DNA from: Squalus acanthias | Taxonomy: Eukaryota | Direction: 5' to 3' | Assembly: GCA_030390025.1 (NCBI GenBank) | Contig: CM059443.1 | Coordinates: forward strand, 48,608,001 to 48,672,000 | DNA: 64,000 nt | Made by a program: the position numbers and the translations under genes | The notes under the pieces: generated by a model | What the model saw: only the letters and a program-made list of their open reading frames with translations | Database searches by the model: none | What the model was told of the DNA's origin: nothing | In this document: piece by piece, positions 16,701 through 59,353 of the stretch | Numbering within the stretch: the first letter of the stretch is position 1 | How the letters are laid out: every line of letters starts with the position of its first letter

Positions 16701-16727
16701 CAACATCCAATCACTGACCCCGATCAC
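13711..16727. repeat. C-rich minisatellite, about 34-bp unit CCAATCACTGACCCCCGATCACCGACCCCGACAT built from 14- and 20-bp subunits
   Basis: CCAAT spacing of 34 bp at 13806, 13840, 13874 and 13908. Subunits are reshuffled further right. Confidence 0.96.
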
Positions 16728-35405: not shown

Positions 35406-37596
35406 CCCGCCAATTTCCCTAACGCCATTTCCCTACAAATACTGATTTCTTTCAGTTCCTCCCTTTCATCAGACCCTATGTTACCCAACATTTCTGGGAG
35501 GTTATTTGTGTCCTCCTTTGTGAAGACAGAACCAAAATATGTATTTAATTTGCCTGACATTTCTTTGCTCCCCATTATCACTTCCCCTGATTTTGACTGC
35601 AAGGGACCTACGCTTGATTTCACTAATCTTTTTCTCTTCACATATCTATAAAAGCTTTTACAGTCAGTTTTTATGTTCCCTGAAAGCTTACTCTCGTATC
35701 CTATTTTCCCCTTCTTAATTAATCCCTTTGTCCTCCTTTGTTGAATCTTAAACTGCTCCCAATCCTCAGGTTTACTGCTTTTTCTGGCCAATTTATATGC
35801 CCTCTCCTTGGATCTTATCCTATCCCTAATTTCCCTTGTTAGCCACGGTTGAGTCACCCTTTTTGTTTTATTCTTATGCCAAACTGGGATGAACAAATTC
35901 TGTAGTTTATCCATGCGGTCTTTGAATGTTTGCCATTGCCTATCCACCGTCAACCCTTTGAGTGACATTCCCCAATCAATCCTACCCAACTCACACCTCA
36001 TACCATCATAGTTTCCTTTATTTAAATTCAGGACCCTAGTCTCTGAGTTAACTACTTCACTCTCCATCCTAATGAAGAATTCTATCATATTATGATCGCT
36101 CTGACCCAAGGGGCCTCGCACAACAAGATTGCTAATTAATCCTTTCTCATTGCATAATACCCAGTCTAAGATGGCCTGATCTCTGGTTGGTTCCTTGACA
36201 TATTGGTCCAGGAAACCATCCCGTAAACACTCCAGGAATTCCTCCTCCATAGTATTGTTACTAATTTGGTTAGCCCAATCTATATGTAGATTAAAGTCAC
36301 CCATGATGACTGCTGTGCCCTTATTGCACGCTTCTCTAATTTCCCTTTTAATGCCATCCCCAACCTCCGCATTACTGTTTGGAGTTCTATATATCACTCC
36401 CACTAATGTTTTCTGCCCCTTGTTATTTCTCAGTTCAACCCATACAGATTCCACATCATCAGAGCTAATATCCTTCCTTTCAATTGTGTTAATCCCCTCT
36501 TTAACCAGCAATGCTACCCCACCTCCCTTTCCTTTTTGCCTATCCTTGCTGAATATTGAGTACCCCTGGATGTTGAGTTCCCAGCCTTGGCCACCCTGGA
36601 GCCATGCTTCGGTAATTCCAATCAAATCATGTTCGTTTACCTCTATTTGCGCAGCTAATTCATCCACCTTGTTCCGAATGCTCCTTGCATTAAGACACAA
36701 AGCCTTCAGGCTTGTTCTTTTAACGCTCTTAGACCTATTAGAATTAGTATTTACTGTGGCCATGTTTGATTTAAACCGTTGTTTTCTCTGACTGCCACTT
36801 TTGTTTTTCTCCTTCCTATCTTTTGCTTTTATCCTTGTTTCCCTTTCCTCTGTCTCCCTGCACAGGTTCCCAACCCCCTGCCATTTTAGTTTAAACCCTC
36901 TCCCAGAGCACTAGCAAACACTCCCCCTAGGACATCGGTCCCGGCCCTGCCCAGGTGTAGACCGTCCGGTTTGTACTGGTCCCACCTCCCCCAGAACCGG
37001 TTCCAATGCCCCAGGAATTTGAATCCCTCCCCCTTGCACCATTCCTCTAGCCACGTATTCATTTGAAATATCCTTCTATTTCTACTCTGACTAGCACGTG
37101 GCACTGGTAGCAATCCTGAGGTTACTACCTTTGAGGTCCTATTTTTTAATTTACCTCCTAACTCCCTATATTCTGCATTTAGGACCTCATCCTGTTTTTT
37201 ACCTATATCGTTGGTACCTATATGCACCACGACAACTGGCTGTTCACCCTCCCCTTCCAAAATGCTCTGTAGCCGCTCTGAGACATCCTTGACCCTTGCA
37301 CCAGGGAGGCAACATACCATCCTGGAGTCTCGTTTGCGGCCGCAGAAACGCCTATCTATTCCCCTTACAATAGAATCCCCTATCACTATAGCTCTCCCAC
37401 TCTTTTTCCTCCCATCCTGTGCAGCAGAACCACCTGCGGTGCTAGGAAGTTGGCTGCTGCTGTCTTCCCCTGATAAGCCATCTCCCTCAACAATATCCAA
37501 AGCGGTATATCTGTTTGAGAGGGGGATGGCCACAGGGGGACCCCTGCACTACCTGCCTGCGCCTATTACTCTGCCTGGTGGTCACCCATTCCCTTC
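35406..37596 (-). mobile_element. CR1 LINE (ORF1 esterase plus ORF2 endonuclease half), running into the gap; inserted in an exon of receptor copy A
   Basis: ORF1 36886-37533 (SNRY, GDSI, HIGTND, DGLHL). ORF2 is open from 36763 to the gap (LNARS, VIYRTP, MGDFN, SDH). Confidence 0.95.
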
Positions 37597-37760
37597 CAAA
37601 CAGTACACATGCTCTGTAGAGTCAGACTTTGGGCCAGTGCTCTCCATTCCTTCACCAGGCCTTGGCTGGCTCGATGGCGTTGGAACTCTCATCACCGAGT
37701 ACGCAACATGCTCGTTGTCATCGCTCTGATCCCTTCTGGGAACCACAGAGTACAGGAAAC
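37582..37760 (-). CDS. IgSF receptor copy A, cytoplasmic tyrosine exon (truncated by CR1, new stop inside the LINE)
   Basis: Acceptor TCCTTCTGTCTAG|GT. FLYSVV...VAYSVM...HVYCL, then LINE-derived EGNG*. Nearly identical to copy B up to 37597. Confidence 0.8.
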
Positions 37761-37854
37761 CTAGACAGAAGGACGAGTAGACGATGTGTGCTTTTAGTTT
37801 CAACTCTCAAAGGGACAGGCTCGGAAGAGCTGGGCAGTAATTCTAGTCACTTAC

Positions 37855-37889
37855 ATTCAGCCACCTGTGTCAGCTGCACATCACCAGCC
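37855..37889 (-). CDS. IgSF receptor copy A, 35-nt cytoplasmic exon (AGDVQLTQVAE)
   Basis: TTTTCTTTACTAACTGTAG| ... |GTAAGT. Phase 2 to 1 fits its neighbours and it is conserved in copy B. Confidence 0.75.
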
Positions 37890-37986
37890 CTACAGTTAGT
37901 AAAGAAAAGCAACCTGTAAATGTTCCATTAAATGAGGAAAACTATACAGAAAGTCTGCCCGAAAACTGAACGAATCCCATCCCTAC

Positions 37987-38008
37987 CTGGGTCCTGGTGC
38001 AGAGGATC
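37987..38008 (-). CDS. IgSF receptor copy A, 22-nt cytoplasmic exon (SSAPGP)
   Basis: AAG|GATCC...CCCAG|GTAGG. Phase 1 to 2 is required to join the TM exon and the next exon; conserved in copy B. Confidence 0.65.
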
Positions 38009-38118
38009 CTTCACAACACATGCCATAAGATTGGAAAGATAAATTTAAAAATCTTTGTAAGGAGTCTGCACTTCCAATTTTCCAGATTTAGAGCAAACAT
38101 TTTAAAGCTCTTGCTTAC

Positions 38119-38256
38119 CTTTGGCAGCTTGTCGTTTCCTTCGGATTATGCAAAGTGCCCCAACAATGCAAAGTACCCCAACAATGCAAAGTACCCCAAC
38201 AATGCAAATGATCACAACCGCACACGCTATGACTACTTTCACAGGTGTGGCAGTGA
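38119..38256 (-). CDS. IgSF receptor copy A, transmembrane exon
   Basis: TATPVKVVIACAVVIICIVGVLCIVGVLCIVGALCII-RRKRQAAK, donor AAG|GTAAGC. Assumes an AG 6 nt downstream of the mutated ancestral acceptor. Confidence 0.8.
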
Positions 38257-38336
38257 CTGGACGTGCAGAGGAGAAGCAACATTAAGTTCAGTCTGTGCAA
38301 TCCCGTGTTATATGTACAGCTGATCACACTGGTTAC

Positions 38337-38369
38337 CTGGGCTGAGGAACAGACATTTCTGGTTAGAAT
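38337..38369 (-). CDS. IgSF receptor copy A, 33-nt stalk exon (NSNQKCLFLSP)
   Basis: CTATTCCAG| ... CCAG|GTAACC, symmetric phase 1, conserved in copy B. Confidence 0.65.
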
Positions 38370-38506
38370 CTGGAATAGTGCAATGGCGGAGGAAGTAAAT
38401 CAAAGCAACTTATAACGGCAACAAACTGTACGACTGATCTGGAATCTCTCAGTTTGAATTATTGATATTAAAAGATCCACATCATATTCTAGATTGTATC
38501 ACTTAC

Positions 38507-38989
38507 TTTGAGTATTTGTACGAGTTAAGTTGCTGGTCACTGAGGAGATTCCAGATGTTGAGGTGGGGGTGTCTGAAGTCTCTGCACTCGCCTCTGTCAC
38601 AGTAAGGGAGATGTTTGCTGCAATCTTCCAGACAGGTTTCCCTGAATCCTGACCGTGGACAGCACAGAGATACCTCCCAGTGTCCACCACATCTGCTGAG
38701 TGAATAGTAAGTTTGTGAGACTGGCGTCTAGCAGTAGGATTGTCTGAGCTTTGGGCAGAGATTCTTTGTGACGATTTTCTATCCACACAGCAGCGTGTGT
38801 TAGAATGTGCCTTATAATTCTCAATGTGAACAGAGTGCAGACACTTGTTGATGTTTCCAGATCTGATCCAAAACAGAGTGAAGGCGAGGTTTTTTATATT
38901 CTCAAACTGGCAGGGTAAAGTCACATTTTCTCCCTTTGACACTGTCAGCGACCAGGAGTTTTCTTCAGTAGAAAATATTTCATCCGAAT
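38507..38989 (-). CDS. IgSF receptor copy A, V-set Ig domain plus S/T-rich stalk exon
   Basis: GENVTLPC...LFWIR...RI...LTIHSADVVDTGRYLC...ISLTVT. Acceptor TTTATAG|AT, donor A|GTAAGT, 483 nt, phase 1-1. Confidence 0.93.
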
Positions 38990-39474
38990 CTATAAACAAC
39001 ATTGAAAAGAACCTTTGTTACTAATTATTTAGAAGTGCTGTTCCCACATGTTATCCAGCTGTTTGATGTAAGTGTGAGTCTGACTGTAACTAGCTGTATT
39101 ATCAGCAGTGGAGACAGCAGGCGTGGGCCAGGGCCAAATCCTTGTTTGGAATATTTGTCTGATTTTCCCACCGTTAGATTAAACATTCCCCAGCTAGAGG
39201 CAGATTGTGTAAGATCAGGAAACACTCGGGGACTGAGAGCAAGGAGTGATAAGACAGGACAAATAATGAAAGATCGAACACACAAAGGCAAAAGACAGGG
39301 GCAGACACTAAAGGACAGAGACAAGGGGGGGAGACTTCAAACTCGCTTCTCTGTATCTCGATACCTGGGAATTTTATCCCCCCCCCCCCGCCCAGATATT
39401 TCCCCAATACCTCCCCTGATATCTCCTCCGATACTTCCCCAATCCCTCCCCCGATATTGCCCCAGTACACGTAC

Positions 39475-39879
39475 CACTCTGGATTATCACAAAGAACAAG
39501 TCGTGGTTTTCACATCCCTCTCCTGACAGTGTGAGCCAGGACGGACACTTCGATGATCCTCTTTCTGTGGAATCCTGAGCCGAGCAGGTAAATACCGTCA
39601 AGTTAACCGTCTTCACATCGAATGTCAGAGACTGAGACTCCGTTTGTTCTTCATTTAATTTGCATTTTCTACACTCTGGCTTACTCTGCCTGTTTGTCCA
39701 ATTAAGACTGATGTTTTCACAAAATTGCATTTCCTTCTCTTTATTCTCACATGTATTGTCAATTTCTGCTCCGAGATCAGTGGAGCTGCACAAGGTTACA
39801 TCATCCCCAGCACCAGTGGGCACGTTGCATTGCAGAGTGGTGACATCTCCTGCTCCTCGGGAGAAGAGATAAGTGGATC
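39475..39879 (-). CDS. IgSF receptor copy A, N-terminal atypical Cys-rich Ig-like domain exon
   Basis: Acceptor CCCTTTCCCTGCAG|GA, donor G|GTACGT, 405 nt, phase 1-1. GDVTTLQC...SLTF...VFTCSA with 9 Cys. Confidence 0.82.
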
Positions 39880-40207
39880 CTGCAGGGAAAGGGCAGAATC
39901 GGATAGAGATAAATAACATTCCACACAGGAAAGATCATTAAACACTCAATGTGACACAAGCCTCTCACAGTAAATGAGCCTAGATAGACCCCCACCACCC
40001 CCTTTACACATTGTGATAGACTGCCCTCCCATTACACAGTCTGAATCCAGTCCACACCACCCCCTCTCCCTGCCTCCATCACACAGGCCTGGACAGAGAT
40101 CCCACCCCCACCATAACACATTCTGATCGAGACCTCACTCCCATCCCCATCACAGCCTGAATAGAGATCTTTCACTGAGCCTGATTACAGTCATACAGAG
40201 TACATAG

Positions 40208-41220
40208 GTTGAGGTTGTTGGAAGTCAATCATCTCAGCTCCAGGTCATCGCTCCATGAGTTCATCAGGGCAGTGTCCAAGGCCCAACCATCTTCAGCTGC
40301 TTCATCAATGACCTTCCCTCCATCATGAAGTGGCACGTGGGACTGTTCACTGATGATTGCACAGTGTTCAGCTCCATTTCCAATTCCTCAGATAATGAAG
40401 CAGTCCGTGCCTGCATGCAGCAAGACCTGGACAACATCCAGGCTTGGGCTGATAAGTGATAAGTAACAGTCACACCACATAATGACCATCTCCAACAAGA
40501 GAGAGCCTAACCACCTGCCCTTGACATTTGATGGCATTACCATCATCGACTCTCCCACCATTAACATCCCGGGGTCACCATTGACCAGAGACTTAGCTGC
40601 AACAACCACATAAATACTGTGGATACTAGGGCAGGTCAGAGGCTGGGTACTCTGCGGCAACTGGCTCACCTGACTCCCCAAAGCCTTTCCACCACCTATA
40701 AGGCACATGTCAGGAGAATGATGAAATACACTCCACTTACGTGGATGAGTGCAGCTCCAAAAACACTCAGGAAACTCAACACCATCCAGGACAAAGCAGT
40801 CCACTTGATCGGCTCCCTATCCGTCCCCTTAAACATTCACTCCCTCCACCACTGGCGCACCATGGCTGCAGTGTGTACCATCTACATGATAGTACCTCGC
40901 CAAGGCTTCTACGGCAGTATCTCCCAAACCCCCGACCTTCACCACCTATAAGGACAAGGGCAGCAGGTGCTTGGGAACACCATCACCTCTAAGTTTCCTT
41001 AAAAGTCGCACAACATTCTGACTTGGAAATATATTGCTGTTCCTTCATTGTCGCTGGGTCAAAATCCTAGAATTGCCTCCCTAACAGCATTGTGGAGCAC
41101 CTTCACCATTTGGAGTGCAGAAGAAAGGCCAAACCCAACTGACCTTCTCAATGGCAACTAGGGATTGGGCAATAAATGCCGGAATTGCCAGTGACACCCA
41201 CATCCCGAAGAAAGATAAAA
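40208..41220 (+). mobile_element. LINE family B 3' fragment in intron 1 of copy A
   Basis: Degenerate VPQGSV.GPTIFSCFINDL region and GGGCAATAAATGCCGG..CCCACATCCC tail. Confidence 0.85.
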
Positions 41221-41898
41221 TAAATATGAAGTAATCATCCACTTAATGAGGGAACTTAATTTAAGACGTGGCATTGAATACTGGTTCCTAACTTTCAGGG
41301 AGATTATAATAACTGATAATAGGTGTGAGGACATTAGTTAGTCCTGTAAAAGGAAAACTTCTGGGTAAATATTATCTTTTTAGTTGGGGTTTCTGTAGAA
41401 GGAGGGAATTAGCTGAAGTTGAATGGTGCAGACCAGAGAGATATTTATAATTAAAAGTATCACTTGATGGAGAGCAATTATATGTAACAAGAGCCGAATT
41501 ATTTATAAGGTAATGAAGTAGAGTTATACCAATCTCGTTAGCCGAATGGAAAAAGAGCTCGTTATTTAGGAAACCAGCAGTTAGGTAAAGTTATCGATAA
41601 GAACTCAGTTCAATTAGACTCTCCTTATATGGAGTTATTTTTCAATGCAGAAATGTGCAAATTGTCACATAGTCGGAGTGAGGGGTAAGTACAAAAAGTG
41701 GCAGAGTGTAATCAGTATTTGGATTCGAAGGGGTTTGATTGGCCTAAAACACTGAACATTAACGCGTTTGAGTCGCCAGCCATCAGCTCTTGTAAATTCT
41801 TGTGGCTCTTTGCCAGAATCAACTCACGGCCTCGCTCTCCCCACAGTGCTCCTGTCTCTTTCACAACTTCAAATGTTTATCCAATTCTCACTTAAATG

Positions 41899-42620
41899 AT
41901 AGAATCATAGAATCATAGAAAGTTACTGCACGGAAGCAGGCCATTTCGGCCCATCGTGTCTGCGCCGGCCAACAAAGAGCTATCCAGTCTAATCCCACTT
42001 CCCAGCTCTTGGTCCGTAGCCCTGCAGGTTACAGCATCCCAAGTGCACATCCAAGTACTTTTTAAATGTGGTTAGGGTTTCTGCCTCTACCACCCTTTCA
42101 GGCAGTGAGTTCCAGACCCCCACAACCGTCTGGGTTAAGAAATTCCCATCAAATCCCCTCTAAACCTTCCACCAATTACTTCAAATCTGTGCCCCCTGGT
42201 TTTTGACCCCTCTGCTAAGGGAAATAGGTCCTTTTTGTCCACTTTATCTCGGCCCCTCATCATTTTATACACCTCAATAAGGTCTCCCCTCAGCCTCCTC
42301 TGTTCCAAGGAAAACAAACCCAGCCTATCCAGTCTTTCCTCATAGCTACGATTCTCTACTCCCGGCAACATCCTTGCAAATCTCCTCTGTACCCTTTCTA
42401 GTGCAATTATATCTTTCCTGTAATATGGTGACCAGAACTGCACGCAGTACTCTAGCTGAGGCCTAACTAGTGTTTTATACAGTTGATAAGATCCAAAGCT
42501 CTCTGCCTCAACCATTCGCTGTGGTAAAGCATTCCCTGCTCCAACAACCCTCTGTGTAAAGACATTTCTCCTAACCTCTCTCCTCACTGTCTTAGTGCCA
42601 TTTTTAAACTGATGACCCGT
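41899..42620 (-). mobile_element. CR1 3' fragments with an (ATAGAATC)n tail
   Basis: YKTLVRPQLEYCVQFWSP...RRLRGDLIEVYK; tail at 41899-41920. Confidence 0.9.
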
Positions 42621-42746
42621 GATTAATCCGTGTTAAAATGCCGCAGCAAGTACTGTGATGCGAGCACATTAAACATATTCACAAGAACACCACTGTTTTA
42701 TATCCTTATCCTAAGCTGAAGATTAACTGAAAGTATTACTCCTTAC

Positions 42747-42801
42747 CTGTAACATGTTGGAACAGAAGGAAAAGACCCACAAACACAGCACCGAGCGCCA
42801 T
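42747..42801 (-). CDS. IgSF receptor copy A, signal-peptide exon (MALGAVFVGLFLLFQHVT-G)
   Basis: GAAATGG Kozak context, hydrophobic 18-mer and phase-1 donor CAG|GTAAGG, typical of IgSF leader exons. Confidence 0.85.
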
Positions 42802-42869
42802 TTCACATTCCTAGCTCGTTCTTTGCTCTTCAGAAGCTGGGTGGCTGTTTCACCATCACATTCTGATCT

Positions 42870-43022
42870 GTGAGATAAAGAGAGAAGTGTAACTTTTGAT
42901 GATGGTGGAAGAGAAAAGCAGCTTCCTGTTTGATCAACTCAGATGATATGTGTGCACTGACATTGTATTAATGGGCCTGGGGACAGAGTTTGGGCTGTTC
43001 GTTCAACCCTCCAACCACAGAA
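42870..43022 (-). promoter_or_regulatory. Putative TATA-less haematopoietic-type promoter of copy A
   Basis: GATA site AGATAA (about 42873), ETS site ACAGGAAG (about 42922-42929, minus) and RUNX site AACCACA (about 43013), all within 220 nt of the ATG. Motif matches only. Confidence 0.35.
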
Positions 43023-47280: not shown

Positions 47281-50200
47281 CATAGAAACATAGAAGATAG
47301 GAGCAGGAGTAGTCCATTTAGCCCCTCTAGCCTGCTCCGCCATTCAATGCGATCATGGCTGATCATCCAAATTCAGAACCCTGTCCCTGCTTTCTCCCCA
47401 TATCCCTTGATCCCTTTAGCCTTAAGAAATATATCCAACTCCTTCTTGAATCTATTTAATGAATTGGCCTCAAGTGCCTTCTGTGGCAGAGAATTCCAGA
47501 GTGTCACCACTCTCTGGGTGAAGAAATTCCTCCTCATTTCCGTCCTAAATGGCTTACCCCTTATCCTTAGACTGTGACCCCTGGTTCTGGACTCCCCGAC
47601 CATCGGGAACATCCTTCTTGCATCTAGTCTGTCCAGTCCTTTCAGAATTTTATAAGTTTCAATGAGATCCCCTCTCATTCTTCTAAACTCTAGCGAGTAT
47701 AAGCCCAATCGACCCAATCTCTCCTCATACGTCATTCCTGCCATCCTAGGTATCAGCTTGGTGAATCTTCGCTGAGCTCCTTCCATGGCAAGAAGATCCT
47801 TCCTCAGATAAGGCGACCAAAACTGCACACAATACTCAAGATGTGGTCTCACCAAGGCCCTGGACAACTGCAGCAAGACATCCTTGTTCCTGTACTCAAA
47901 CCCTCTCGCTCCGAAGGCCAACATACCATTTGCCTTCTTAACCTCCTGCTGCACCTGTATGCTTACCTTCAGCGACTGGTGCACAAGGACACCCAGGTCT
48001 CGTTGCACTTCCCCTTCTCCCAATCTATTGCCATTCAGATAATAATCTGCCTTCCTGTTTTTGACACCAAAGTGGATAGCCTCACATTTATCCACGTTAT
48101 ATTGCATCTGCCATGCTTCTGCCCAATCACCCAACCTGTCCAAATCATACTGGAGTTTCTCGGCATCCTCCTCACAGCACACACGCCCACCCAGCTTTGT
48201 GTCGTCTGCAAACTTGGAGATATTACATCTAGTTCCCTTGTCGAGATCATTAATATATATTGTGAATAGCTGGGGTCCAAGGACCGATCCCTGCGGTACC
48301 CCACTAGTCACTGCCTGCCACTCGGAAAAAGACCCGTTTATTCCAACTCTTTGCTTTCTGTCTGCCAACCAGTTCTCTATACAAGTCAATACCTTGCCCC
48401 CAATCCCATGTGCCTTAACTTTACACGCTAATCTCCTATGTGGGACCTTATCGAAAGCCTTTTGAAAGTCCAAATACACCACATCCACTGGTTCTCCCTT
48501 ATCTATTTTACCAGTTACATCCTCAAAAAATTCTAGCAGATTAGTCAAGCACAATTTACCTTTTGTAAATCCATGTTGACTTTGTCCGATCCAGTCATTG
48601 TTTTCTAAGTGCTCTGCTATTACATCCTTTATAATGGACTCTAGCATTTTCCCCACTACCGATGTCAGGCTTACCGGTCTGTAATTCCCCGTTTTCTCTC
48701 TACCAAATTTTTTGAATAGTCGGGTAACATTAGCTACCCTCCAATCCATGGGTATTGTTCCAGATTCCATCGAATGTTGGAAGATGATCAGCAATGCATC
48801 TACTATTTCTAGGGCCACTTCCTTAACTACCCTAGGATGTAGATTATCAGGCCCTGGGGATTTATCGGCCTTCAATCCCACCAATTTCCCTAACACCATT
48901 TTCCTACAAATACTGATTTCTTTCAGTTCCTCCCTTTCATCAGATGCTATGTTCCCCAACATCTCTGGAAGGTTATTTGTGTCCTCCTTTGTGAAGACAG
49001 AACCAAAATATGTATTTAATTGGTCTGACATTTCTTTGTTCCCCATTATAAGTTCCCCTGATTCTGACTGCAAGGGACCTACGCTTGACTTCACCAATCT
49101 TTTGCTCTTCACATATCTATAAAAGCTTTTACAGTCAGTTTTTATGTTCCCTACAAGCTTACTCTCATATTCTATTTTCCCCACCTTAATTAATCCCTTT
49201 GTCCTCCTTTGTTGAATCCTAAACTGCTCACAATCCTCAGGTTTACTGCTTTCTCTGGCCAATTTATATGTCCTCTCCTTGGATCTTATGCTATCCCTAA
49301 TTTTCCTTGTTAGCCACGGTTGAGTCACCTTTTTTGTTTTATTCTTATGCCAAACTGGGATGAACAAATTCTGTAGTTCATCCATGCGGTCTTTGAATGT
49401 TTGCCATTGCCTATCCACCGTCAACCCTTTGAGTGACATTCCCCAATCAATCCTACCCAACTCGCGCCTCATACCATCGTAGTTTCCTTTATTTAAATTC
49501 AGGACCCGAGTCTCTGAGGCAACTACTTCACTCTCCATCTTAATGAAGAATTCTATCATATTATGATCGCTCCGACCCAATGGGCCTCGTACAACAAGAT
49601 TGCTAATTAATCCTTTCTCATTACTTAATACCCAGTCTAAGATGGCCTGCTCTCTGGTTGGTTCCTCAACATATTGGTCCAGGAAACCATCCCGTAAACA
49701 CTCTAAATACCACTCCCACTAACGTTTTCTGCCCCTTGGTATTTCTCAGTTCTACCCATACAGATTCCACATCATCAGAGCTAATATCCTTCCTTACAAT
49801 GGTGTTAATCCCCTCTTTAACCAGCAATGCTACATCACCTCCCTTTCCTTTTTGCCTATCTTTCCTGAATATTGAATACCCCTGGATGTTGAGTTCCCAG
49901 CCTTGGCCACCCTGGAGCCATGTTTCCGTAATCCCAATCAAATCATATTCGTTTACCTCTATTTGCGCAGCTAATTCATCCACCTTATTCCGAATGCTCC
50001 TTGCATTAAGGCACAAAGCCTTCAGGCTTGTTTTTTTAACGCTCTTAGACCTATTAGAATTATTATTTACTGTGGCCATGTTTGATTTAAACCGTTGATT
50101 TCTCTGACTGCCACCTTTGTTTTTCTCCTTCCTATCTTTTGCTTTTATCCTTGTTTCCCTTTCCTCTGTCTCCCTGCTCAGGTTCCCAACCCCCTGCCAT

Positions 50201-50795
50201 TTTAGTTTAAACCCTCCCCCAGAGCACTAGCAAACACTCCCCCTAGGACATCGGTCCCAGCCCTGCCCAGGTGCAAACCATCCGGTTTGTACTGGTCCCA
50301 CCTCCCCCAGAACCGGTTCCAATGTCCCAGGAATTTGAATCCCTCCCCCTTGCACCATTCGTCTAGCCACGTATTCATCTGAAATATCCTTCTATTTCTA
50401 CTCTGACTAGCACGTGGCACTGGTAGCAATCTGGAGATTACTAACTTTGTGGTCCTATTTTTTAATTTACCTCCTAACTCCCTATATTCGGCTTTTAGGA
50501 CCTCATCCCATTTTTTACCTATATCGTTGGTACCTATATGCACCACGACAACTGGCTGTTCACCCTCCCCTTCCAAAATGTTCTGCAGCCGCTCTGAGAC
50601 ATCCTTGACCCTTGCACCAGGGAGGCAACACACCATCCTGGAGTCTCGTTTGCGGCCGCAGAAACGCCTATCTATTCCCCTTACAATAGAATCCCCTATC
50701 ACTATAGCTCTACCCCTCTTTTTCCTCCCATCCTGTGCAGCAGGGCCACCCCTGGTGCCAGGAAGTTGGCTGCTGCTGCCTTCCTCTGATAAGCT
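47281..50795 (-). mobile_element. Near full-length CR1 (partial ORF1, ORF2 with a deletion in the endonuclease), same subfamily as 35406-37596
   Basis: (CATAGAAA)n tail, 735-aa open RT region 47373-49580, EN N-terminus 49666-50079 and ORF1 esterase 50202-50702. Confidence 0.95.
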
Positions 50796-52154: not shown

Positions 52155-52350
52155 ATATTGGCCAGGACACCGGGGAGAACTCCCCTGCTCTTCTTCGAAA
52201 TAGTGCCACGGGATCTTTTACATCACCTGAGAGAGCAGACGGGTCTCAGTTTAACGTCTCATCCGAAAGACGTCACCTCTGACAGTGCAGCACTCCCTCA
52301 GTACTGTACTGGAGTGTCAGCCTAGATGATGTGCTCAGGTCTCTGGAGTG
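52155..52350 (-). mobile_element. Deu-domain SINE (SacSINE1-like) core
   Basis: ATATTGGCCAGGACACCGGGGAGAACTCCCCTGCTCTTCTTCGAAATAGTGCCA.GGGATCTTTTAC...GTTTAACGTCTCATCCGAAAGACG. Confidence 0.85.
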
Positions 52351-53702: not shown

Positions 53703-53953
53703 TCAGGTTTCCTCCATTTTAGCATAAATAGGATTTTCTTCCATTTTTAACGGGCCAGGTCGTGGATCATCTTCCTCCAGCTGGGACTGTGTCACCGCGT
53801 CTACCGGGCAGCCTATCAAAGAATAAATCTGCTCATTGGACAAAGCAACGGGATCCTCCTTACTGTCCTCTTTGGGCTGTGATTGGCCGTCTGGTTTGAG
53901 TTCAGTAGCTGAAGAGGTTTCAACCTGCCGTCCATGGTCCGTGTGGTCTCTGC
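53703..53953 (-). CDS. IgSF receptor copy B, terminal cytoplasmic exon
   Basis: Phase-1 acceptor CTCTCTTAATATCTAG|GC. RDHTDHGRQ...NEQIYSLIGC...EENPIYAKMEET*. Absent from the ORF track. Confidence 0.8.
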
Positions 53954-54113
53954 CTAGATATTAAGAGAGGAGATCACGTTTGATGGGTTCACTTCCAGTG
54001 GGGGACAGATAATGAAAGTGGACTGTCTCGTTACTTGAGATAAAGGTCCAGGAGCTTTAGAACAGACACAGTGTTGACTGAGAGGATTATACTGAAAGAT
54101 TGCAACGACTTAC

Positions 54114-54148
54114 ATTTTACTCCCTGGATTTCAGTTTTGTCTCCATCA
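54114..54148 (-). CDS. IgSF receptor copy B, 35-nt exon (DGDKTEIQGVK)
   Basis: TTTTCTGTTTTCTTAG| ... |GTAAGT. Phase 2 to 1 exactly bridges the flanking exons. Confidence 0.78.
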
Positions 54149-54344
54149 CTAAGAAAACAGAAAATTAAACATGTGAATAATGAGTAACATAAGATTCAAA
54201 CAATATTAAACCATTGTAAGTGGAGACTAGGTGAGGTCACTTTCTCCCCAGAGCCTGGATTTCAGTCCAGCCCAGACTGAAATTCTCTCATTCATTTTCT
54301 CTCTCTCTGTCTCTCTCTCTCTCTGTCTCTCCGACTCTCGTTCT

Positions 54345-54603
54345 NNNNNNNNNNNNNNNNNNNNNNNNNNNNNNNNNNNNNNNNNNNNNNNNNNNNNNNN
54401 NNNNNNNNNNNNNNNNNNNNNNNNNNNNNNNNNNNNNNNNNNNNNNNNNNNNNNNNNNNNNNNNNNNNNNNNNNNNNNNNNNNNNNNNNNNNNNNNNNNN
54501 NNNNNNNNNNNNNNNNNNNNNNNNNNNNNNNNNNNNNNNNNNNNNNNNNNNNNNNNNNNNNNNNNNNNNNNNNNNNNNNNNNNNNNNNNNNNNNNNNNNN
54601 NNN
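54345..54603. other. Assembly gap within a (CT)n-rich tract
   Basis: N run flanked by CT microsatellite. Exon phases on the two sides are compatible, supporting this join. Confidence 0.97.
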
Positions 54604-54959
54604 CCTATCTCTTTCTCTCTTGCTTTGTCTCTCTCTCTCTTTCTATCTTTGCTATGTGAGCAGTCCTCTCTACAATGAGTTTTCACAGTCCCAATCCAAT
54701 TCCTTGCCTAAAACTGCCCATCATTCAGTAAAATATTTGGACGAAATTGATCATTATCGTCAAATACGCCAAAATATTGTCCTGACAAAGTGTAAAAGAA
54801 AATAACTTCACACGGGCACAGTGAAAGGAGCTATTCTGATGTTGGGATAAAGGAGCACTATCAGGTCAGAGGGCAGAGTGATTTACACGGCCTCCAGCCA
54901 TTCTATACCTGACTTAGAAATGTTCGGTTGTGAGATTGGCTGCACAACCTGGAAATGTT

Positions 54960-55330
54960 TTGTGCTGGGTGGTGGAATAGATTAGTACGGCCCTTTCATA
55001 TTTTAGGATCTGTTCTCAAATCAAGTCCAGAATATTGGGAATAAAAGTCTCTCTCTGTGCCTCTATTACTGTCTGTCTGTCCCTGTCTCTTTGTCTTTCT
55101 CTGTCTCTTTCTCTCGAAGGGTCCTTGATGAAATAAGTTTAGTCATCTCGTTCCAGTTTGTAGCTCGTGTGAGCCACAGTACAAAACTACCGCTAAATTA
55201 GCACTTTCACTCAAACAGGCCATGAGGTGTGAGAAGTGAAATGTCCGAGCTCCCTCCTGAGTTTGGAGTTGAGGAGCATTGTTGGGACAGTCCAGAGGGA
55301 GCTTTACGCTGCACCTAATCTGGAGTGCTC
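54960..55330 (+). mobile_element. Degenerate SINE-like element (possibly LF-SINE related)
   Basis: GTTCCAGTTTGTAG...CACAGTACAAAACTACC...AATTAGCAC...GTTGAGGAGCATTGTTGGGACAGT..GGGAGCTTTAC.CTGCA resembles recalled LF-SINE-type bodies. Confidence 0.4.
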
Positions 55331-55487
55331 CAAATGATACTGTGTGGCCACAGTGGAAAAGTAATCCATTTGCAGAGTGGGCTCCCCTCACCTTCATTAC
55401 ATTAACAATCTCCGAACCCTCCATCGCAAAACAAACCCGTGGTCAGTGTTGAACGTTGCCGGGGCCGACAGCTGTCACTCTGCTTAC

Positions 55488-55674
55488 CCTTTGACCATTG
55501 ACTCTTCGATCAAACAGTACACATGCTCTGTAGAGTCAGACTTTGGGCCAGTGCTCTCCATTCCTTCACCAGGCCTTGGCTGGCTCGATGGCGTTGGAAC
55601 TCTCGTCACCGAGTACGCAACATGCTCGTTGTCATCGCTCTGATCCCTTCTGGGAACCACAGAGTACGGGAAAC
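55488..55674 (-). CDS. IgSF receptor copy B, complete cytoplasmic tyrosine exon
   Basis: FPYSVV...VAYSVT...HVYCLIEESMVK, donor GG|GTAAGC, 187 nt, phase 1 to 2. Confidence 0.82.
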
Positions 55675-55768
55675 CTAGACAGAAGGACGAGTAGACGATG
55701 TGTGCTTTTAGTTTCAACTCTCAAAGGGACAGGCTTGGAAGAGCTGGGCAGTAATTCTAGTCACTTAC

Positions 55769-55922
55769 ATTCAGCCACCTGTGTCAGCTGCACATCACCG
55801 GCCCTACAGTTCGTAAAGAAAAGCAACCTGTAAATGTTCCATTAAATGAGGAAAACTATACAGAAAGTCTGCCCGAAAACTGAACGAATCCCATCCCTAC
55901 CTGGGTCCTGGTGCTGAGGATC
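55769..55922 (-). CDS. IgSF receptor copy B, two cytoplasmic mini-exons (55922-55901 and 55803-55769)
   Basis: Same splice sites and near-identical sequence to the copy A mini-exons. Confidence 0.7.
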
Positions 55923-56032
55923 CTTCACAACACATGCCATAAGATTGGAAAGATAAATTTAAAAATCTTTGTAAGGAGTCTGCACTTACAATTTTCTAGA
56001 TTTAGAGCAAACATTTTAAAGCTCTTGCTTAC

Positions 56033-56158
56033 CTTTGGCAGCTTGTCGTTTCCTTCGGATTATGCAAAGTGCCCCAACAATGCAAAGTACCCCAACAATG
56101 CAAATGATCACAACCGCAAACGCTATGGCTACTTTCACAGGTGTGGCAGTGTCTGGAC
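56033..56158 (-). CDS. IgSF receptor copy B, transmembrane exon
   Basis: Canonical CTCCTCTGCAG|GT acceptor. GPDTATPVKVAIAFAVVIICIVGVLCIVGALCII-RRKRQAAK. Confidence 0.85.
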
Positions 56159-56232
56159 CTGCAGAGGAGAAGCAACATTAAGTTCAGTCTGTGCAATCCC
56201 GTGTTATATGTACAGCTGATCACACTGGTTAC

Positions 56233-56265
56233 CTGGGCTGAGGAACAGACATTTCCGGTTAGAAT
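56233..56265 (-). CDS. IgSF receptor copy B, 33-nt stalk exon (NSNRKCLFLSP)
   Basis: Paralogous to 38337-38369 with intact AG and GT. Confidence 0.65.
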
Positions 56266-56359
56266 CTGGAATAGTGCTCTGGCGAAGAAAGGAAATCGAA
56301 CCAACTTTTAATGGGTACAAACTGGACAACTGATCTGGAATCTATCAACTTTAATTTTT

Positions 56360-59080
56360 TTAATTCATTCATGGGATGTGGGCGTCATTGACAAGGCCAA
56401 CATTTATTGCCCATCCCTAATTGCCCTTGAGAAGGTGGTGGTGAGCTGCCTTCTTGAACCGCTGCAGTCCATGTGGTGAAGGTACTCCCACAGTGCTGTT
56501 AGGGAAGGAGGCCCAGGATTTTGACCCAGCGACGATGAAGGAACGGCAATATACTTCTAAGTCAGGATGGTGTGTGACTTGGGGGGCAACTTGGAGATGA
56601 TGGTGTTCCCATGAGCCTGCTGCCCTGTCCTTCTAGGTGGTAGAGGTCACGGGTTTGGGAGGTGCTGCCGAAGAAGCTTTGGCGAGTTGCAGCAGTGCAT
56701 CTTGTAGCTGGTACACACTGCAGCCAAGGTACGCCAGTGGTGGAGGGAGTGAATGTTTAAGATGTGGATGGGGTGCCAATCGAGCGGGCTGCTTTGTCCT
56801 GGATGGTGTCGAGTGTCTTCAGTGTTGTTGGAACTGCACTCATCGAGGCAAGTGGAGAGTATTCCATCACACTCCTTACTTGTGCCTTGTAGATGGTGGA
56901 AAGGCTTTGGTGAGTAAGGAGGTGAGATACTCGCTGCAGAATACCCAGCCTCTGACCTACTCTTGTTGCCACAGTATTTATGTGGCTGTTCCAGTTACGG
57001 TTCTGGTCAATAGTGACCCCCAGGATGTTGATGGTGGGGGTTTCGGCAATGGTAATGCCGTTGAATGTTAAGGGGAGGTGGTTAGACTCTCTCTTATTGG
57101 AGATGGTCATTGCCTGGCACTTATGTGGCGCGAATGTTACTTGCCATTTATCAGCCCAAGCCTGAATGTTGTCCAGGTCTTGCTGCACACAGACATGGAC
57201 TGCTTCATTATCTGAGGAGTTGCGAATGGAACTGAACACTGTGCAGTCATCAGCAAGCATCCCCACTTCTGTCCTTATGATGGAGGGAAGGTCATTGATG
57301 AAGCAGCTGAAGATAGTTCGGACTAGGACACTGCCCTGAGGAACTTTTGCAGCAATGTCCTGGGGCTGAGATGATTGGCCTCCAACAACCAGAACCACCT
57401 TCCTTTGTGATAGGTATGACTCCAGCCAGTGGAGAGTTTACCCCCTGATTCCATTGCCTTCAATTTTACTGAGGTTCCTTGATGCCACAATCGGTCAAAT
57501 GCTACCTTGATGTCAAGGGCAGTCACTCTAACCTCCCCTCTGGAATTCAGCTTTTGTCCATGTTTGGACCAAGGTTGTAATGAGGTCTGGAGCCAAGTGG
57601 TCCGAGCAGAACCCAAACTGAGCATCAGTGAGCAGGTTATTGGTGAGTAATTGCCACTTAATAGTACTGTCGACAATACCTTCCATCACTTTGCTGATGA
57701 TTGAGAGTAGACTGATGGGGCGGGAATTCACCGTTTTGGATTTATACTACTTTTTGAAGACCGGACATACCTGGGCAATTTTCCACTTTGTCGGGTAGAT
57801 GCCAGTGTTGTAGCTGTACTGGAACAGCTTGGCTAGAGGCACGGCTAGTTCTGGAGCACAAGCCTTCAGCACGACAGCCGGGATGTTGTCGGGGCTCATA
57901 GCCTTTGCTGTATCCAGTGCGCTCAACCGTTTCTTGATATCACGTGGAGTGAATCAAATTGGCTGAAGACTGGCTTCTGTGATAGTGGGGACTGCAGGAG
58001 GAGGCCGAGATGAATCATCCACTCACCACTTCTGGCTGAAGATGGTTGCAAACACTTCAGCCTTGTCTTTTGCACTCACGTGCTGGGCTCTGACATCATT
58101 GAGGATGGGGATGTGCATGGAGCCTCCTCCCGTTAGTTGTTTAATGGTCCACCACCATTCACGATGTGGCAGGACTGCAGAGCTTTGATCTCATCCATTG
58201 GTTGTGGGATCGCTTTACTCTGTCTATAGCATGCTCCATCTGCTGTTTAGCATGCATGTATTGTAGCTTCACCAGGTTGGCACCTCATTTTTAGGTACGT
58301 CTGCTGCTGTTCCTGGAATGCTCTTCTACACTGCTCATTGAACCGGGGTTGGTCCCCTGGCTTGATGTTAATGGTAGAGTGAGGGATATGTCGGCCCATG
58401 AAGTTACAGATTGTGATGGAGTACAATTCTGCTGCTGCTGATGGTCCACAGTACCTCATGGATGTCCAGTTTTGAGCTGCTAGATCTGTTCTGAATCTAT
58501 CCCATTTAGTACGGTGGTAGTGCCACACAACACGATGGAAGGTGTCCTCAGGATGAAGACCGGTCCTTGTCTCCACAAGGACTGTGCGGTGGTTACTCTT
58601 ACCAATACTGTCATGGAGAGATGCATCTGCGACAGGTAGATTGGTGAGGACGAGGTCAAGTATGTTTCTCCCTCGTGTTGGTTCTTTCACCACCCGCCGC
58701 TGGCAGCTATGTCCTTCAGGACTCGACCAGCTCCGTCAGTAGCGGTGCTACCGAGCCACTCGGTGATGGACATTGAAGTCCCCCACCCAGAGTACATTCT
58801 GTGCCCTTGCTACCCTCAGTGCTTCTTCCAAGTGGTGTTCAACGTGGAGGAGTACTGATTCATCAGCTGAGGGAGGCCGGTAGGTGGAAATCAGCAAGAG
58901 GTTTCCTTGCCCATGTTTGACCTGATGCCATGAGACCTCTTGGGGTCAGGGAGTCAATGTTGAGGACTCCAAGGGCCACTCCCTTCCGACTATATACCAC
59001 TGTGCTGCCACCTCTGATGGGTCTGTCTTGCCTGAGGGACAGGACATACTTAGGGATGGTGATGGAGGAGCCTGGGACAT
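56360..59080 (-). mobile_element. LINE family B (EN plus RT, decayed) inserted in a copy B intron
   Basis: EPTRGRNILDLVLTN...; RPISLLSIISKVME; VPQGSVL...FINDL...ADD. Absent from the matching 137-nt intron of copy A. Confidence 0.92.
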
Positions 59081-59162
59081 TTCGTGAAAGAATTATTTAT
59101 ATTATTTATATTGAATTATTTATATTAAATGAGTCGCATTGTTTCTAGATTGTATCACTTAC

Positions 59163-59353
59163 TTTGAGTATTTGTACGAGTTAAGCTGCTGGTCACTGAG
59201 GAGATTCCAGATGTTGAGGTGGGGGTGTCTGAAGTCTCTGCACTCGCCTCTGTCACAGTCAGGGAGATGTTTGCTGCAATCTTCCAGACAGGTTTCCCTG
59301 AATCCTGACTGTGGACAGCACAGAGATACCTCCCAGTGTCCACCACATCCGCT
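59163..59353 (-). pseudogene. IgSF receptor copy B, 3' part of the V-set/stalk exon (5' part displaced by a LINE)
   Basis: ADVVDTGRYLCAVHSQDSGKPVWKIAANISLTVT...TNTQ|GTAAGT is nearly identical to copy A. Homology stops at about 59353, where LINE family B begins. Confidence 0.85.

What the first reader, a model, noticed from the sequence alone, without database searches (positions are those of the whole stretch)
37582..59353. Tandem pair of an unassigned two-Ig-domain, multi-tyrosine immune-type receptor
Seen: combining the two copies gives a ten-exon, phase-consistent minus-strand gene. It has a leader, a Cys-rich Ig-like D1, a V-set D2 with S/T stalk, a Cys mini-exon, an uncharged TM, and a tail of about 185 aa with five tyrosine motifs (F-P/L-YSVV, VAYSV-T/M, HVYCLI, QIYSLI, NPIYAKM). 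Most tail exons are invisible in the ORF track. Established: V-domain receptors with neutral TMs and YxxV/I/L/M tails (CD300, SIRP, NITR, skate MDIR, TIGIT/BTLA-type) are usually inhibitory or adaptor-recruiting immune receptors in birth-and-death clusters. Inference: this is a diversifying cartilaginous-fish immune receptor family that I cannot place in a named group. It is the best candidate for an undescribed system in this window.
Basis: partly seen in the sequence, partly recalled or inferred. Interest (0 to 1): 0.85.

Follow-up and report, generated by a model that had tools for sequence, protein, structure and literature searches.

The report
Two damaged copies, unnamed Ig receptor
The window holds two transposon-damaged tandem copies of a real, transcribed shark cell-surface receptor gene from an unnamed two-Ig-domain family that reaches from sharks to echidna and has never been studied.

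Summary
Every exon matches predicted proteins of other sharks (leader 94%, D1 63%, D2 79%, T1 93%, T2 100%, T3 78% identity). Spliced contigs from four public runs show seven of the nine predicted junctions.

No single locus in the window carries the whole gene. In copy A (42801-37597) a 5'-truncated LINE cuts the first tail exon. Copy B (59365-53703) has the full tail, but a LINE cuts its V exon, and no leader or D1 lies in the window.

The family is not specific to cartilaginous fish. Relatives with the same architecture and a conserved 'EC-x-PY-A/S-V' tail motif occur in sturgeon, teleosts, amphibians, reptiles and echidna. Nearly all carry only placeholder names ('uncharacterized', 'hypothetical').

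Pfam, PDB sequence and fold searches gave only generic V-set matches. The tail has no canonical ITIM, ITSM or ITAM. It has five conserved tyrosines, including NPIY-x-x-M.

In other sharks, long-tail forms pair with short-tail forms that carry an Asp in the membrane span, and the two have near-identical ectodomains, which is the paired-receptor pattern. Kinship with teleost DICPs could not be tested here. Immune expression is not shown.

The parts
42747..42801 (-). Copy A leader exon (MALGAVFVGLFLLFQHVT, ends in phase 1)
   Evidence: ATG in good context and a CAG|GTAAGG donor. 94% identical to shark leaders. Spliced to D1 in 3 of 4 runs.
39475..39879 (-). Copy A D1 exon: Ig-like domain with 9 Cys, phase 1-1
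   Evidence: No Pfam match. 63% identical to Heptranchias and Pristiophorus D1. Model mean pLDDT 68.5, with only weak V-type Ig fold hits at E>=0.03. hhalign of shark D1 against bony-vertebrate D1 gives probability 95.8%.
38507..38989 (-). Copy A D2 exon: V-set domain plus S/T-rich stalk
   Evidence: Pfam V-set 9.3e-9. Model pLDDT 86.2. Generic V-domain fold hits. D1|D2 joint in 4 of 4 runs.
38318..38341 (-). Candidate 24-nt mini exon ((T)QVTSVIS), phase 1-1
   Evidence: AG/GT borders. A counterpart is present in the Pristiophorus and Heterodontus models. Seen in 0 of 4 runs.
38119..38256 (-). Copy A transmembrane exon, uncharged, with three IVGVLC repeats, followed by RRKRQAAK
   Evidence: It has an 18-nt in-frame extra repeat relative to copy B. 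TM|m1 joint seen in run X2.
37987..38008 (-). Copy A tail mini exon m1 (SSAPGP-)
   Evidence: Colinear with Pristiophorus P0109. Joints seen in X2.
37855..37889 (-). Copy A tail mini exon m2 (AGDVQLTQVAE; supplies the first base of the Cys codon)
   Evidence: Colinear with P0109 and P0002. Joints seen in X2.
37597..37760 (-). Copy A tail exon T1, cut after HVYCL. The frame reads on into the LINE to a stop at 37582.
   Evidence: Homology to copy B ends at 37597. Translation. LINE contigs and the gene contig both part from the window at 37597 (tables 7 and 8).
35406..37596 (-). 5'-truncated LINE that cuts copy A's T1 exon. N gap 35206-35405 follows.
   Evidence: ORF1 and ORF2 reading frames. 94-95% identical to the LINE at 48877-50794. 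No T2 or T3 of copy A anywhere in the window.
59163..59365 (-). Copy B: the 3' 203 nt of the D2 exon only
   Evidence: 94.2% identical to copy A 38454-38709. tblastn of D2 residues 98-160.
59366..64000 (+). LINE and nested retroelements that replace the 5' part of copy B's D2 exon and run to the window end
   Evidence: Endonuclease/RT-like ORFs. Repeat matches. No D1 or leader homology.
56348..59110 (.). Retroelement insertion in copy B's D2-TM intron
   Evidence: Absent from copy A. RT-like ORFs.
56033..56158 (-). Copy B transmembrane exon with two IVGVLC repeats. It keeps the upstream acceptor AG that copy A has lost.
   Evidence: RNA contigs use an acceptor at this position (table 5c).
55901..55922 (-). 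Copy B m1
   Evidence: One synonymous difference from copy A.
55769..55803 (-). Copy B m2
   Evidence: One synonymous difference from copy A.
55488..55674 (-). Copy B T1, complete (FPYSVV, VAYSVT, HVYCLI), phase 1 to 2
   Evidence: 93% identical to Pristiophorus.
54345..54603 (.). Assembly gap inside the T1-T2 intron of copy B
   Evidence: It was not filled or looked up.
54114..54148 (-). Copy B T2 (DGDKTEIQGVK)
   Evidence: 11 of 11 residues match three shark proteins.
53703..53953 (-). Copy B last exon T3 (QIYSLI, NPIYAKM, stop TGA)
   Evidence: 78% identical to Pristiophorus.

Best explanation
The window contains two tandem, LINE-damaged copies of the long-tailed member of an unnamed, ancient type I membrane receptor family.

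The encoded plan is:
- a signal peptide;
- D1, a divergent Ig-like domain with extra cysteines;
- D2, a V-set domain, probably tied to D1 by an interdomain disulfide;
- a mucin-like S/T stalk;
- an uncharged membrane span;
- a tail of about 185 residues.

The tail carries five tyrosines that are conserved among sharks: x-P-Y-S-V-V, V-A-Y-S/A-V-T, H-V-Y-C-L-I, x-x-Y-S-L-I and N-P-I-Y-x-x-M.

Inferred mechanism. Ligand binding by the fast-evolving D1/D2 ectodomain leads to phosphorylation of these tyrosines. They then dock SH2 and PTB proteins. NPxY would suit a Dok- or Shc-type PTB domain and YxxM a p85-type SH2 domain. The Y-S/A-x-hydrophobic sites would suit Csk- or SHP-type SH2 domains. These specificities are recalled, not tested. 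The result would be a regulatory, probably dampening, signal. In other sharks this is opposed by short-tail paralogues that have nearly the same ectodomain, an Asp in the membrane span and a membrane-proximal Cys.

In this window copy B is a pseudogene fragment, because its V exon is split by a LINE. Copy A is either a pseudogene or a tail-truncated variant that keeps only the first two motifs intact.
For: Shown:
- Exon anatomy and phases.
- Colinearity with RefSeq and UniRef shark proteins over the whole length.
- Spliced contigs with zero depth in the introns.
- D2 is V-set. D1 is homologous across jawed vertebrates.
- The D1-end Cys and the second Cys of the D2 'CC' are both present in 31 of 38 sequences, both absent in 7, and never present singly.
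- Tyrosine motifs in 11 shark long-tail proteins: Y2, Y3 and NPIY in 11 of 11, Y4 in 10 of 11, Y1 in 9 of 11.
- Short-tail forms with Asp in the membrane span occur in Heptranchias, Heterodontus, Pristiophorus and S. torazame.
- Ectodomains of long- and short-tail forms cluster by species with 100/99 support. P0001 and P0002 are 99% identical over the ectodomain.
- Copy A against copy B: 11 substitutions in 574 coding nt against 27 in 525 non-coding nt, Fisher p=0.0044.
- LINE breakpoints.
Against: - No canonical ITIM, ITSM or ITAM in the window's tail exons.
- No tissue or cell-type information. The run names are coded and 'RNA' is the tool's guess.
- The contigs differ from copy A by about 1-4.5% per piece. 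The one contig that reaches 37597 continues into an intact tail. So transcription of these two copies themselves is not shown.
- Differences between the contigs and copy A are 25 non-synonymous to 9 synonymous. That fits diversifying selection, but equally fits neutral decay of a pseudogene.
- The tetrapod clusters I looked up each list one LOC per species. Copy number was not measured. If they are single-copy, that fits a conserved housekeeping-type role as well as an immune one.
- The D1 model is only moderately confident.
- The covariation of the two cysteines may rest on a single loss in teleosts.
Confidence: 0.7

Rival explanations
1. The family is the cartilaginous-fish and tetrapod branch of the DICP family (diverse immunoglobulin domain-containing proteins). 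That family is so far described in teleosts, holosteans and coelacanth, so the gene would be a member of a named family.
For: Passages of bioRxiv 10.1101/2021.06.11.448072 describe DICPs as follows:
- D1-D2 or D1a-D2a-D1b-D2b ectodomains;
- four conserved cysteines per domain;
- inhibitory, charged-TM, secreted and ambiguous forms, and D1-only forms.

The present family matches several of these:
- D1-D2 and D1-D2-D1-D2 forms (P0001);
- four conserved Cys in D2;
- long-tail, charged-TM and apparently secreted forms;
- a D1-only isoform (P0115);
- many diverged teleost clusters.
Against: - None of the 30 clusters whose source names I looked up carries a DICP name, and neither Atlas search returned a DICP-named cluster.
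- From memory only, DICP D1 is described as the V-type domain and D2 as Ig-like. Here the clear V-set domain is D2.
- The charged residue named for bowfin DICPs is Arg. Here it is Asp.
- No DICP sequence could be obtained, so homology is untested.
Confidence: 0.25
2. It is a conserved non-immune cell-surface signalling or adhesion receptor. The shark expansion is incidental, and 'immune-type' is a mislabel.
For: - The tetrapod clusters I looked up each list one LOC per species, with a conserved tail (EC-x-PYAV, E-x-x-YS, C-terminal T-x-YA).
- No ITIM, ITSM or ITAM.
- No expression data.
- The best non-antigen-receptor fold neighbour of D2 is sodium-channel subunit beta-4.
Against: - Shark paralogues show the paired long-tail and charged-TM pattern, with ectodomains homogenised within species.
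- D1 evolves fast (63% identity) while T1 is at 93%.
- Teleosts hold many diverged clusters.
- These are hallmarks of leukocyte receptor families, though none is proof.
Confidence: 0.2
3. Copy A is not dead. The LINE gives it a new stop and 3' end, and it makes a roughly 440-aa receptor with a shortened tail that keeps Y1 and Y2 and lacks Y4 and NPIY. It would act as a decoy or altered-signal variant.
For: - All eight copy A exons are open with intact splice sites from the ATG to the stop at 37582.
- Coding parts diverge less than introns between the copies.
- One X2 contig is 99.1% identical to copy A's D2 (2 differences in 226).
Against: - No contig in 4 of 4 runs crosses the T1-LINE junction. 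The X2 contig leaves the window exactly there and continues into an intact tail.
- Copy A has lost the upstream TM acceptor that the transcripts use.
- It has a 6-residue expansion in the membrane span.
- Contigs drop rare variants, so absence is weak evidence.
Confidence: 0.3

Closest known systems
DICP (diverse immunoglobulin domain-containing proteins) of ray-finned fish and coelacanth
   Same: Two kinds of Ig ectodomain in D1-D2 or doubled D1-D2-D1-D2 order, extra conserved cysteines, and long-tail, charged-TM, secreted and D1-only forms, all in a multigene family.
   Different: Sequence kinship is untested. The charged residue here is Asp, not Arg. The tail lacks a canonical ITIM. The family extends to sharks and tetrapods, where DICPs are not reported in the passages I read.
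Paired receptor families (KIR, LILR, SIRP, CD300/MAIR type)
   Same: Long-tail, neutral-TM and short-tail, charged-TM paralogues with near-identical ectodomains that cluster by species.
   Different: No sequence relation beyond the Ig fold. The membrane-proximal domain is the V-set one. The charged residue is acidic. The tyrosine motifs are not ITIMs. Both copies in the window are of the long-tail type.
NILT / CD300 / TREM / NKp44 / pIgR-type V domains
   Same: V-type Ig domains with a second disulfide. D1's weak fold hits include NKp44, TREM2 and pIgR D2.
   Different: Those families have a Cx3-9C pair (passages of bioRxiv 10.1101/2022.04.21.489081). In D2 here the extra cysteines are 15-16 residues apart (K-C-L-H-S...R-C-C). 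No sequence hit was specific to these families.
CD200R1
   Same: An Ig receptor whose tail signals without an ITIM through an NPxY site. This is recalled knowledge. One Atlas feature hit was a CD200R1-like cluster.
   Different: CD200R is V then C2, with the V domain distal. The Atlas hit is generic V-set. NPIY is seen only in the shark members.
VISTA and sodium-channel beta subunits (nearest solved V domains)
   Same: Full-length V-domain alignment to the family profile (VISTA about 6e-5, SCN1B 1e-5). SCN4B is the best non-antigen-receptor fold hit (TM 0.79 by target, 19% identity).
   Different: Those proteins have a single V domain, no D1, and different extra cysteines and tails. The similarity is at the level of the V-set fold only.

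Membership tests
Ig superfamily V-set domain | B- and F-strand cysteines, C-strand Trp, D-x-G-x-Y-x-C motif, Pfam V-set above its cut-off | tested here: met
   D2 scores 35.9 bits against a cut-off of 26. 20 of 20 family members match V-set. W40, C49, C66, D102, Y106 and C108 are invariant and C26 nearly so. The model has pLDDT 86 and V-domain fold hits.
ITIM/ITSM inhibitory receptors | (S/I/V/L)xYxx(I/V/L) or TxYxx(V/I) in the tail | tested here: not met
   A regex over T1 (both copies), T2 and T3 found 0 ITIM, 0 ITSM and 0 ITAM. It found only YxxV/I 'itim-like' sites, one NPxY and YxxM. Orectolobiform relatives do have VAYSVV or VAYAVV.
NILT / CD300 / TREM / pIgR type | An extra Cys pair spaced Cx3C to Cx9C inside the V domain | tested here: not met
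   The definition comes from passages. The extra Cys of D2 are at positions 49 and 65/66, 15-16 residues apart.
NITR | An N-terminal V domain (often with a J-like end) followed by an I domain with six conserved cysteines | tested here: not met
   The Pfam V-set match is on the membrane-proximal domain, and D1 has no Pfam match. The I-domain definition comes from passages. The J motif was not examined.
DICP | Sequence homology of D1 and D2 to zebrafish, gar or bowfin DICP D1 and D2 | not testable with these tools
   No DICP sequence was reachable.
DICP | D1-D2 or D1a-D2a-D1b-D2b architecture with inhibitory, charged-TM and secreted forms | tested here: met
   P0001 is D1-D2-D1-D2. Forms are listed. 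This feature is shared with other families and so is not diagnostic.
Paired activating/inhibitory receptors | A short-tail paralogue with a charged TM residue and a near-identical ectodomain | tested here: met
   Met in Heptranchias, Pristiophorus and S. torazame; Heterodontus also has an Asp-TM short-tail form, and the Mustelus short-tail form lacks the Asp. Inside this window both copies are of the long-tail type. Earlier notes place Asp-TM copies beyond the window end; I did not check them.
Siglec / CD22 | An N-terminal V-set domain of the Siglec type, Pfam Ig_CD22 above its cut-off | tested here: not met
   Ig_CD22 scores 21 bits against a cut-off of 27 for D2. 4 of 20 members match weakly. 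The V domain is not N-terminal.

The most novel reading that the evidence does not exclude
This is a so-far unnamed receptor family about as old as jawed vertebrates. It has a disulfide-locked Ig-like D1 plus V-set D2 ectodomain, and a tyrosine code that is neither ITIM, ITSM nor ITAM (EC-x-PY-A/S-V conserved from sharks to echidna; NPIY-x-x-M in sharks). No therian relative appeared in the one search made. Sharks would have turned it into a paired system whose activating arm uses an acidic membrane residue and therefore an unusual partner.
Probability: 0.3. Interest if true: 0.7.

Novelty: new member of a known kind. Interest (0 to 1): 0.5.

Why it matters
If the family is truly undescribed, it adds an old, widely kept but unstudied branch to the vertebrate Ig-type surface receptors, with a tail signalling code unlike the textbook ITIM/ITAM pairs. 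In sharks it shows the paired-receptor pattern with within-species homogenisation of ectodomains. That would give a new handle on how such systems arose before bony fish. If it proves to be DICP, it would move the origin of DICPs back to the ancestor of jawed vertebrates and give them tetrapod relatives. For this window alone the result is modest: two transposon-broken copies in a repeat-rich cluster.

Tried and rejected
- **D1 exon alone in the search for homologous proteins** gave no hit. That search is limited by length; whole proteins found through D2 then matched D1.
- **A profile search with A1** returned only sharks, because the candidate cap was filled by shark words.
- **Pfam on D1 and T1** gave nothing.
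- **PDB profile search and Foldseek** gave only generic Ig or V hits.
- **The two ESM Atlas searches** gave generic V-set clusters: CD200R1-like, PD-1, TIGIT, CD96, JAML, VSIG4 and CD7-like. I treat these as leads only.
- **A weak D2-like tblastn hit** at 31787-32035 on the plus strand (E 0.031) contains a stop and no Ig motifs. I rejected it as chance.
- **A search for copy A's T2 and T3, or copy B's D1 and leader**, elsewhere in the window found none.
- **The idea that the two LINEs (35406-37596 and 48877-50794) belong to the duplicated unit** was rejected. Their 5' truncation points differ, and LINE contigs read on past 37597.
- **Six paper searches** found no description of this family. 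I saw listings only, except for passages of bioRxiv 10.1101/2021.06.11.448072, bioRxiv 10.1101/2022.04.21.489081, PMC5340972 and PMC6795676. Subscription papers such as Haire 2012, and all supplementary tables, were not visible. Those tables hold the DICP and NILT sequences and identifiers and could bear on the DICP question.

Full report
**What is in the sequence**

A self-comparison shows two minus-strand copies.
- Copy A 37597-38451 matches copy B 55511-56347 at 94.7% over 855 columns.
- Copy A 38454-38709 matches copy B 59111-59365 at 94.2%.
- In copy B these two blocks are separated by a 2.8-kb retroelement (56348-59110).

I read both strands and placed ten exons with AG/GT borders and matching phases:
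- leader 42801-42747;
- D1 39879-39475;
- D2 plus stalk 38989-38507;
- a 24-nt exon 38341-38318;
- TM 38256-38119;
- m1 38008-37987;
- m2 37889-37855;
- T1 37760 onward in copy A, 55674-55488 in copy B;
- T2 54148-54114;
- T3 53953-53703.

- F-L/P-YSVV, VAYSV-M/T and HVYCLI in T1;
- QIYSLI and NPIYAKM in T3;
- an uncharged membrane span.

I never joined exons into one query.

**Neither copy is whole**

Copy A has all exons open from the ATG. Its similarity to copy B stops at 37597, just after HVYCL. There a 5'-truncated LINE begins (ORF1 and ORF2 frames), and the frame reads ...EGNG-stop at 37582.

An N gap (35206-35405) interrupts that LINE. The sequence below the gap is unrelated. No T2 or T3 of copy A exists anywhere in the window. 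Whether they lie in the unassembled part is unknown.

Copy B has TM, m1, m2, T1, T2 and T3. Of D2 it has only the last 203 nt. Above 59365 a plus-strand LINE and nested repeats run to the window end, and there is no D1 or leader.

The window therefore holds one leader, one D1, one whole and one partial D2, two TM, two m1, two m2, one whole and one cut T1, one T2 and one T3.

**The N gap named by the scan's program**

Gap 54345-54603 lies between T1 and T2 of copy B. I did not fill it or look it up, and I cannot show DNA continuity across it.

Two results argue that no coding exon is hidden there.
- In Pristiophorus P0109, Heptranchias P0002 and others, the residues of T1 and T2 are adjacent.
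- The 577-nt contig of run X2 leaves the window at 37597 with a loose end. Read on the minus strand, its first 30 letters equal the end of copy B's T1 followed by the start of T2 (table 7, compared by eye).

A mis-join of two different gene copies at the gap remains possible.

**It is a real gene family**

The D2 exon matches Pfam V-set (9.3e-9, 35.9 bits against a cut-off of 26). D1 and T1 match nothing in Pfam.

A full HMMER scan with the D2 exon found 85 proteins at E<=1e-3, 26 at <=1e-10 and 4 at <=1e-30.

The best are whole proteins with exactly the predicted plan. Examples are Heptranchias perlo XP_067829442 (533 aa), Rhincodon LOC125487102 (511 aa) and Mustelus LOC144480428.

A search with the natural protein P0002 added Pristiophorus, Carcharodon, Cetorhinus, two Scyliorhinus species, Heterodontus, Hemiscyllium and two Chiloscyllium species.

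Exon by exon, the window is identical to its best shark match as follows:

| Exon | Identity |
|---|---|
| leader | 94% |
| D1 | 63% |
| D2 | 79% |
| T1 | 93% |
| T2 | 100% |
| T3 | 78% |

No protein in the set is near-identical, so the window's species is not among them. In the domain trees the window groups with Pristiophorus, Heptranchias and Heterodontus.

**Transcription**

The one run search found eight holders from two studies. The organisms are coded A and B, and the kind is 'RNA?' by the tool's guess. I laid four of the eight runs on 37450-42850.

Exons are covered, while the intron bins 39079-39440, 39984-40164 and 41251-41612 have zero depth in 4 of 4 runs. This behaves like RNA.

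Joints with minus-strand GT..AG ends:

| Junction | Runs showing it |
|---|---|
| leader to D1 (42747 to 39879) | 3 of 4 |
| D1 to D2 (39475 to 38989) | 4 of 4 |
| TM to m1, m1 to m2, m2 to T1 | 1 of 4 (one X2 contig) |
| D2 to TM directly | 1 of 4 (X2); an X3 joint is ambiguous |
| 24-nt exon | 0 of 4 |

The D2-TM contig uses an acceptor 6 nt upstream of copy A's. Copy B keeps that AG and copy A has lost it.

Results against a simple reading:
- The contigs differ from copy A by about 1-4.5% per piece (for example 9 of 404, 14 of 404, 10 of 417, 12 of 459 and 2 of 226).
- The contig that reaches 37597 goes on into an intact tail and carries copy B's letter at 37691.
- No contig crosses the T1-LINE junction.

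So a close allele, paralogue or sister species is transcribed. Expression of these two copies themselves is not shown. Of 34 listed differences, 25 change the amino acid and 9 do not.

**Selection between the copies**

Over the shared part there are 11 substitutions in 574 coding nt (6 non-synonymous, 4 synonymous, 1 in a split codon) plus one in-frame 18-nt repeat gain in copy A's membrane span. The non-coding part has 27 substitutions in 525 nt. Fisher p is 0.0044. Constraint, or gene conversion, acted after the duplication.

**The family is much older than sharks**

Names were looked up for 30 clusters. They include:
- sturgeon;
- teleosts (Bagarius, Pygocentrus, Denticeps, Aldrovandia, Oncorhynchus, Hypomesus);
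- newt, axolotl and six frogs;
- turtles, crocodilians and lizards;
- the echidna (LOC119931841).

Nearly all carry only placeholder names such as 'uncharacterized', 'hypothetical' or 'Ig-like domain-containing'. One Komodo dragon record is auto-named PD-L1. Two shark records are auto-named 'serine-rich adhesin' and 'pfl2'.

A 20-protein alignment has these invariant positions:
- the D1 B- and F-strand cysteines;
- in D2, C, W, two extra C, R, D-x-G-x-Y-x-C and W.

The tail keeps 'EC-x-PY-A/S-V', 'E-x-x-YS' and a C-terminal 'T-x-YA'. In sharks the E and the first base of the C codon lie in exon m2, and the rest lies in T1.

D1 of sharks and D1 of bony vertebrates align with hhalign probability 95.8% (E 6.7e-9, 100 columns). 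No therian protein appeared among the 85 hits. This is one search and is not proof of loss.

**Folds**

D2 models with mean pLDDT 86.2. It matches only generic V domains: TCR and antibody V, and sodium-channel beta-4 at 19% identity.

D1 models with mean pLDDT 68.5, as a beta sandwich with a poorly defined cysteine-rich insert. Its Foldseek hits are all weak (E>=0.03). They are mostly V-type Ig domains such as TCR V-alpha, NKp44, CAR D1, TREM2 and pIgR D2. The two VIA libraries were not installed.

The Cys just before E-N-H-D-L-F-F at the end of D1 and the second Cys of the D2 'CC' are both present in 31 of 38 proteins. Both are absent in 7, all of them teleosts where a source name was looked up. 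Neither is ever present alone. This suggests an interdomain disulfide, although the pattern may reflect one loss event.

**Comparison with named families**

- The profile against PDB sequences gave only generic Ig hits (Robo, titin, Fc-epsilon-RI alpha, SCN1B, TCR V-alpha, VISTA at about 6e-5).
- Pfam on 20 of 20 members gave only generic Ig models, and these lay on D2 in the member whose positions were shown.
- NILT/CD300/TREM/pIgR-type domains are defined by a Cx3-9C pair (passages). Here the extra cysteines are 15-16 residues apart, so this feature is not met.
- NITRs have a distal V domain (passages), which is not met.
- The tail has no ITIM, ITSM or ITAM by regex.
- DICPs share the D1-D2 or doubled architecture and the range of forms (passages). 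I could get no DICP sequence. This is the main open rival.

**Paired forms**

Four sharks have short-tail proteins with a conserved membrane span that contains Asp, preceded by S-C-S and Arg: Heptranchias P0001, Heterodontus P0117, Pristiophorus P0118 and S. torazame P0122.

In D1 and D2 trees, long- and short-tail forms of one species are each other's nearest relatives (100/99 support for Heptranchias, Pristiophorus, S. torazame and Mustelus). P0001 is 99% identical to P0002 over the ectodomain.

The tail types, in contrast, are shared across species. Among 11 long-tail proteins, Y2, Y3 and NPIY are kept in 11 of 11, Y4 in 10 of 11 and Y1 in 9 of 11.

This is the paired-receptor pattern with ectodomain homogenisation. 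Earlier first-reader notes, which I did not check, report Asp-TM and chimeric copies 8-26 kb beyond the window end.

**Verdict**

The window itself holds only two LINE-broken long-tail copies.

The family is not shark-specific, and its inhibitory or immune role is inferred from architecture and paralogue pattern, not shown.

I rate it a new member of a known kind (Ig-type paired surface receptors), with moderate interest. The DICP comparison is the first thing to run.

Noticed in passing
window 38191-38208 (copy A TM exon) against 56105 (copy B): Copy A has three tandem 18-nt units encoding IVGVLC where copy B has two. This lengthens the membrane span from about 25 to about 31 hydrophobic residues.
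   Followed up: partly
window 38257-38263 against 56153-56160: Copy B keeps an acceptor AG 6 nt upstream of copy A's TM acceptor, where copy A reads gcac instead of gcag. The RNA contigs use the upstream site, which gives ...Q-S-P-Y-T-A-T-P...
   Followed up: partly
D1 end (window about 39517-39515) and D2 'CC' (window about 38795-38790); alignment A2: There is perfect co-occurrence of the D1-end Cys and the second Cys of D2's CC across 38 family members: both in 31, neither in 7, one alone in 0. This predicts an interdomain disulfide.
   Followed up: partly
window 35206-35405: A second N gap sits inside the LINE that cuts copy A. The sequence below it is unrelated to the LINE, so the join is uncertain and copy A's distal tail exons could be unassembled.
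   Followed up: partly
window 1220-6220, 11476-12186, 10699-11476, 13711-16727, 22006-24137, 32386-32887: There are large satellite arrays. A 27/54-nt G-rich unit spans about 5 kb and recurs at 11.5 kb. Others have 37-nt, 34-nt, 23-nt C-rich and 23-nt units. They explain the strong GC-skew swings.
   Followed up: no
proteins P0115, P0116 and P0111 (Pristiophorus isoforms): The predicted isoforms skip D2 (giving D1-only receptors) or skip the TM exon (giving soluble forms that still carry the tail frame). This hints at alternative splicing in the family.
   Followed up: no
window 40213-41232, 41794-42517 (introns of copy A): The retroelement pieces in copy A's introns are covered at very high depth in all four runs. 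These repeat families are therefore abundantly transcribed or abundant in the libraries.
   Followed up: no
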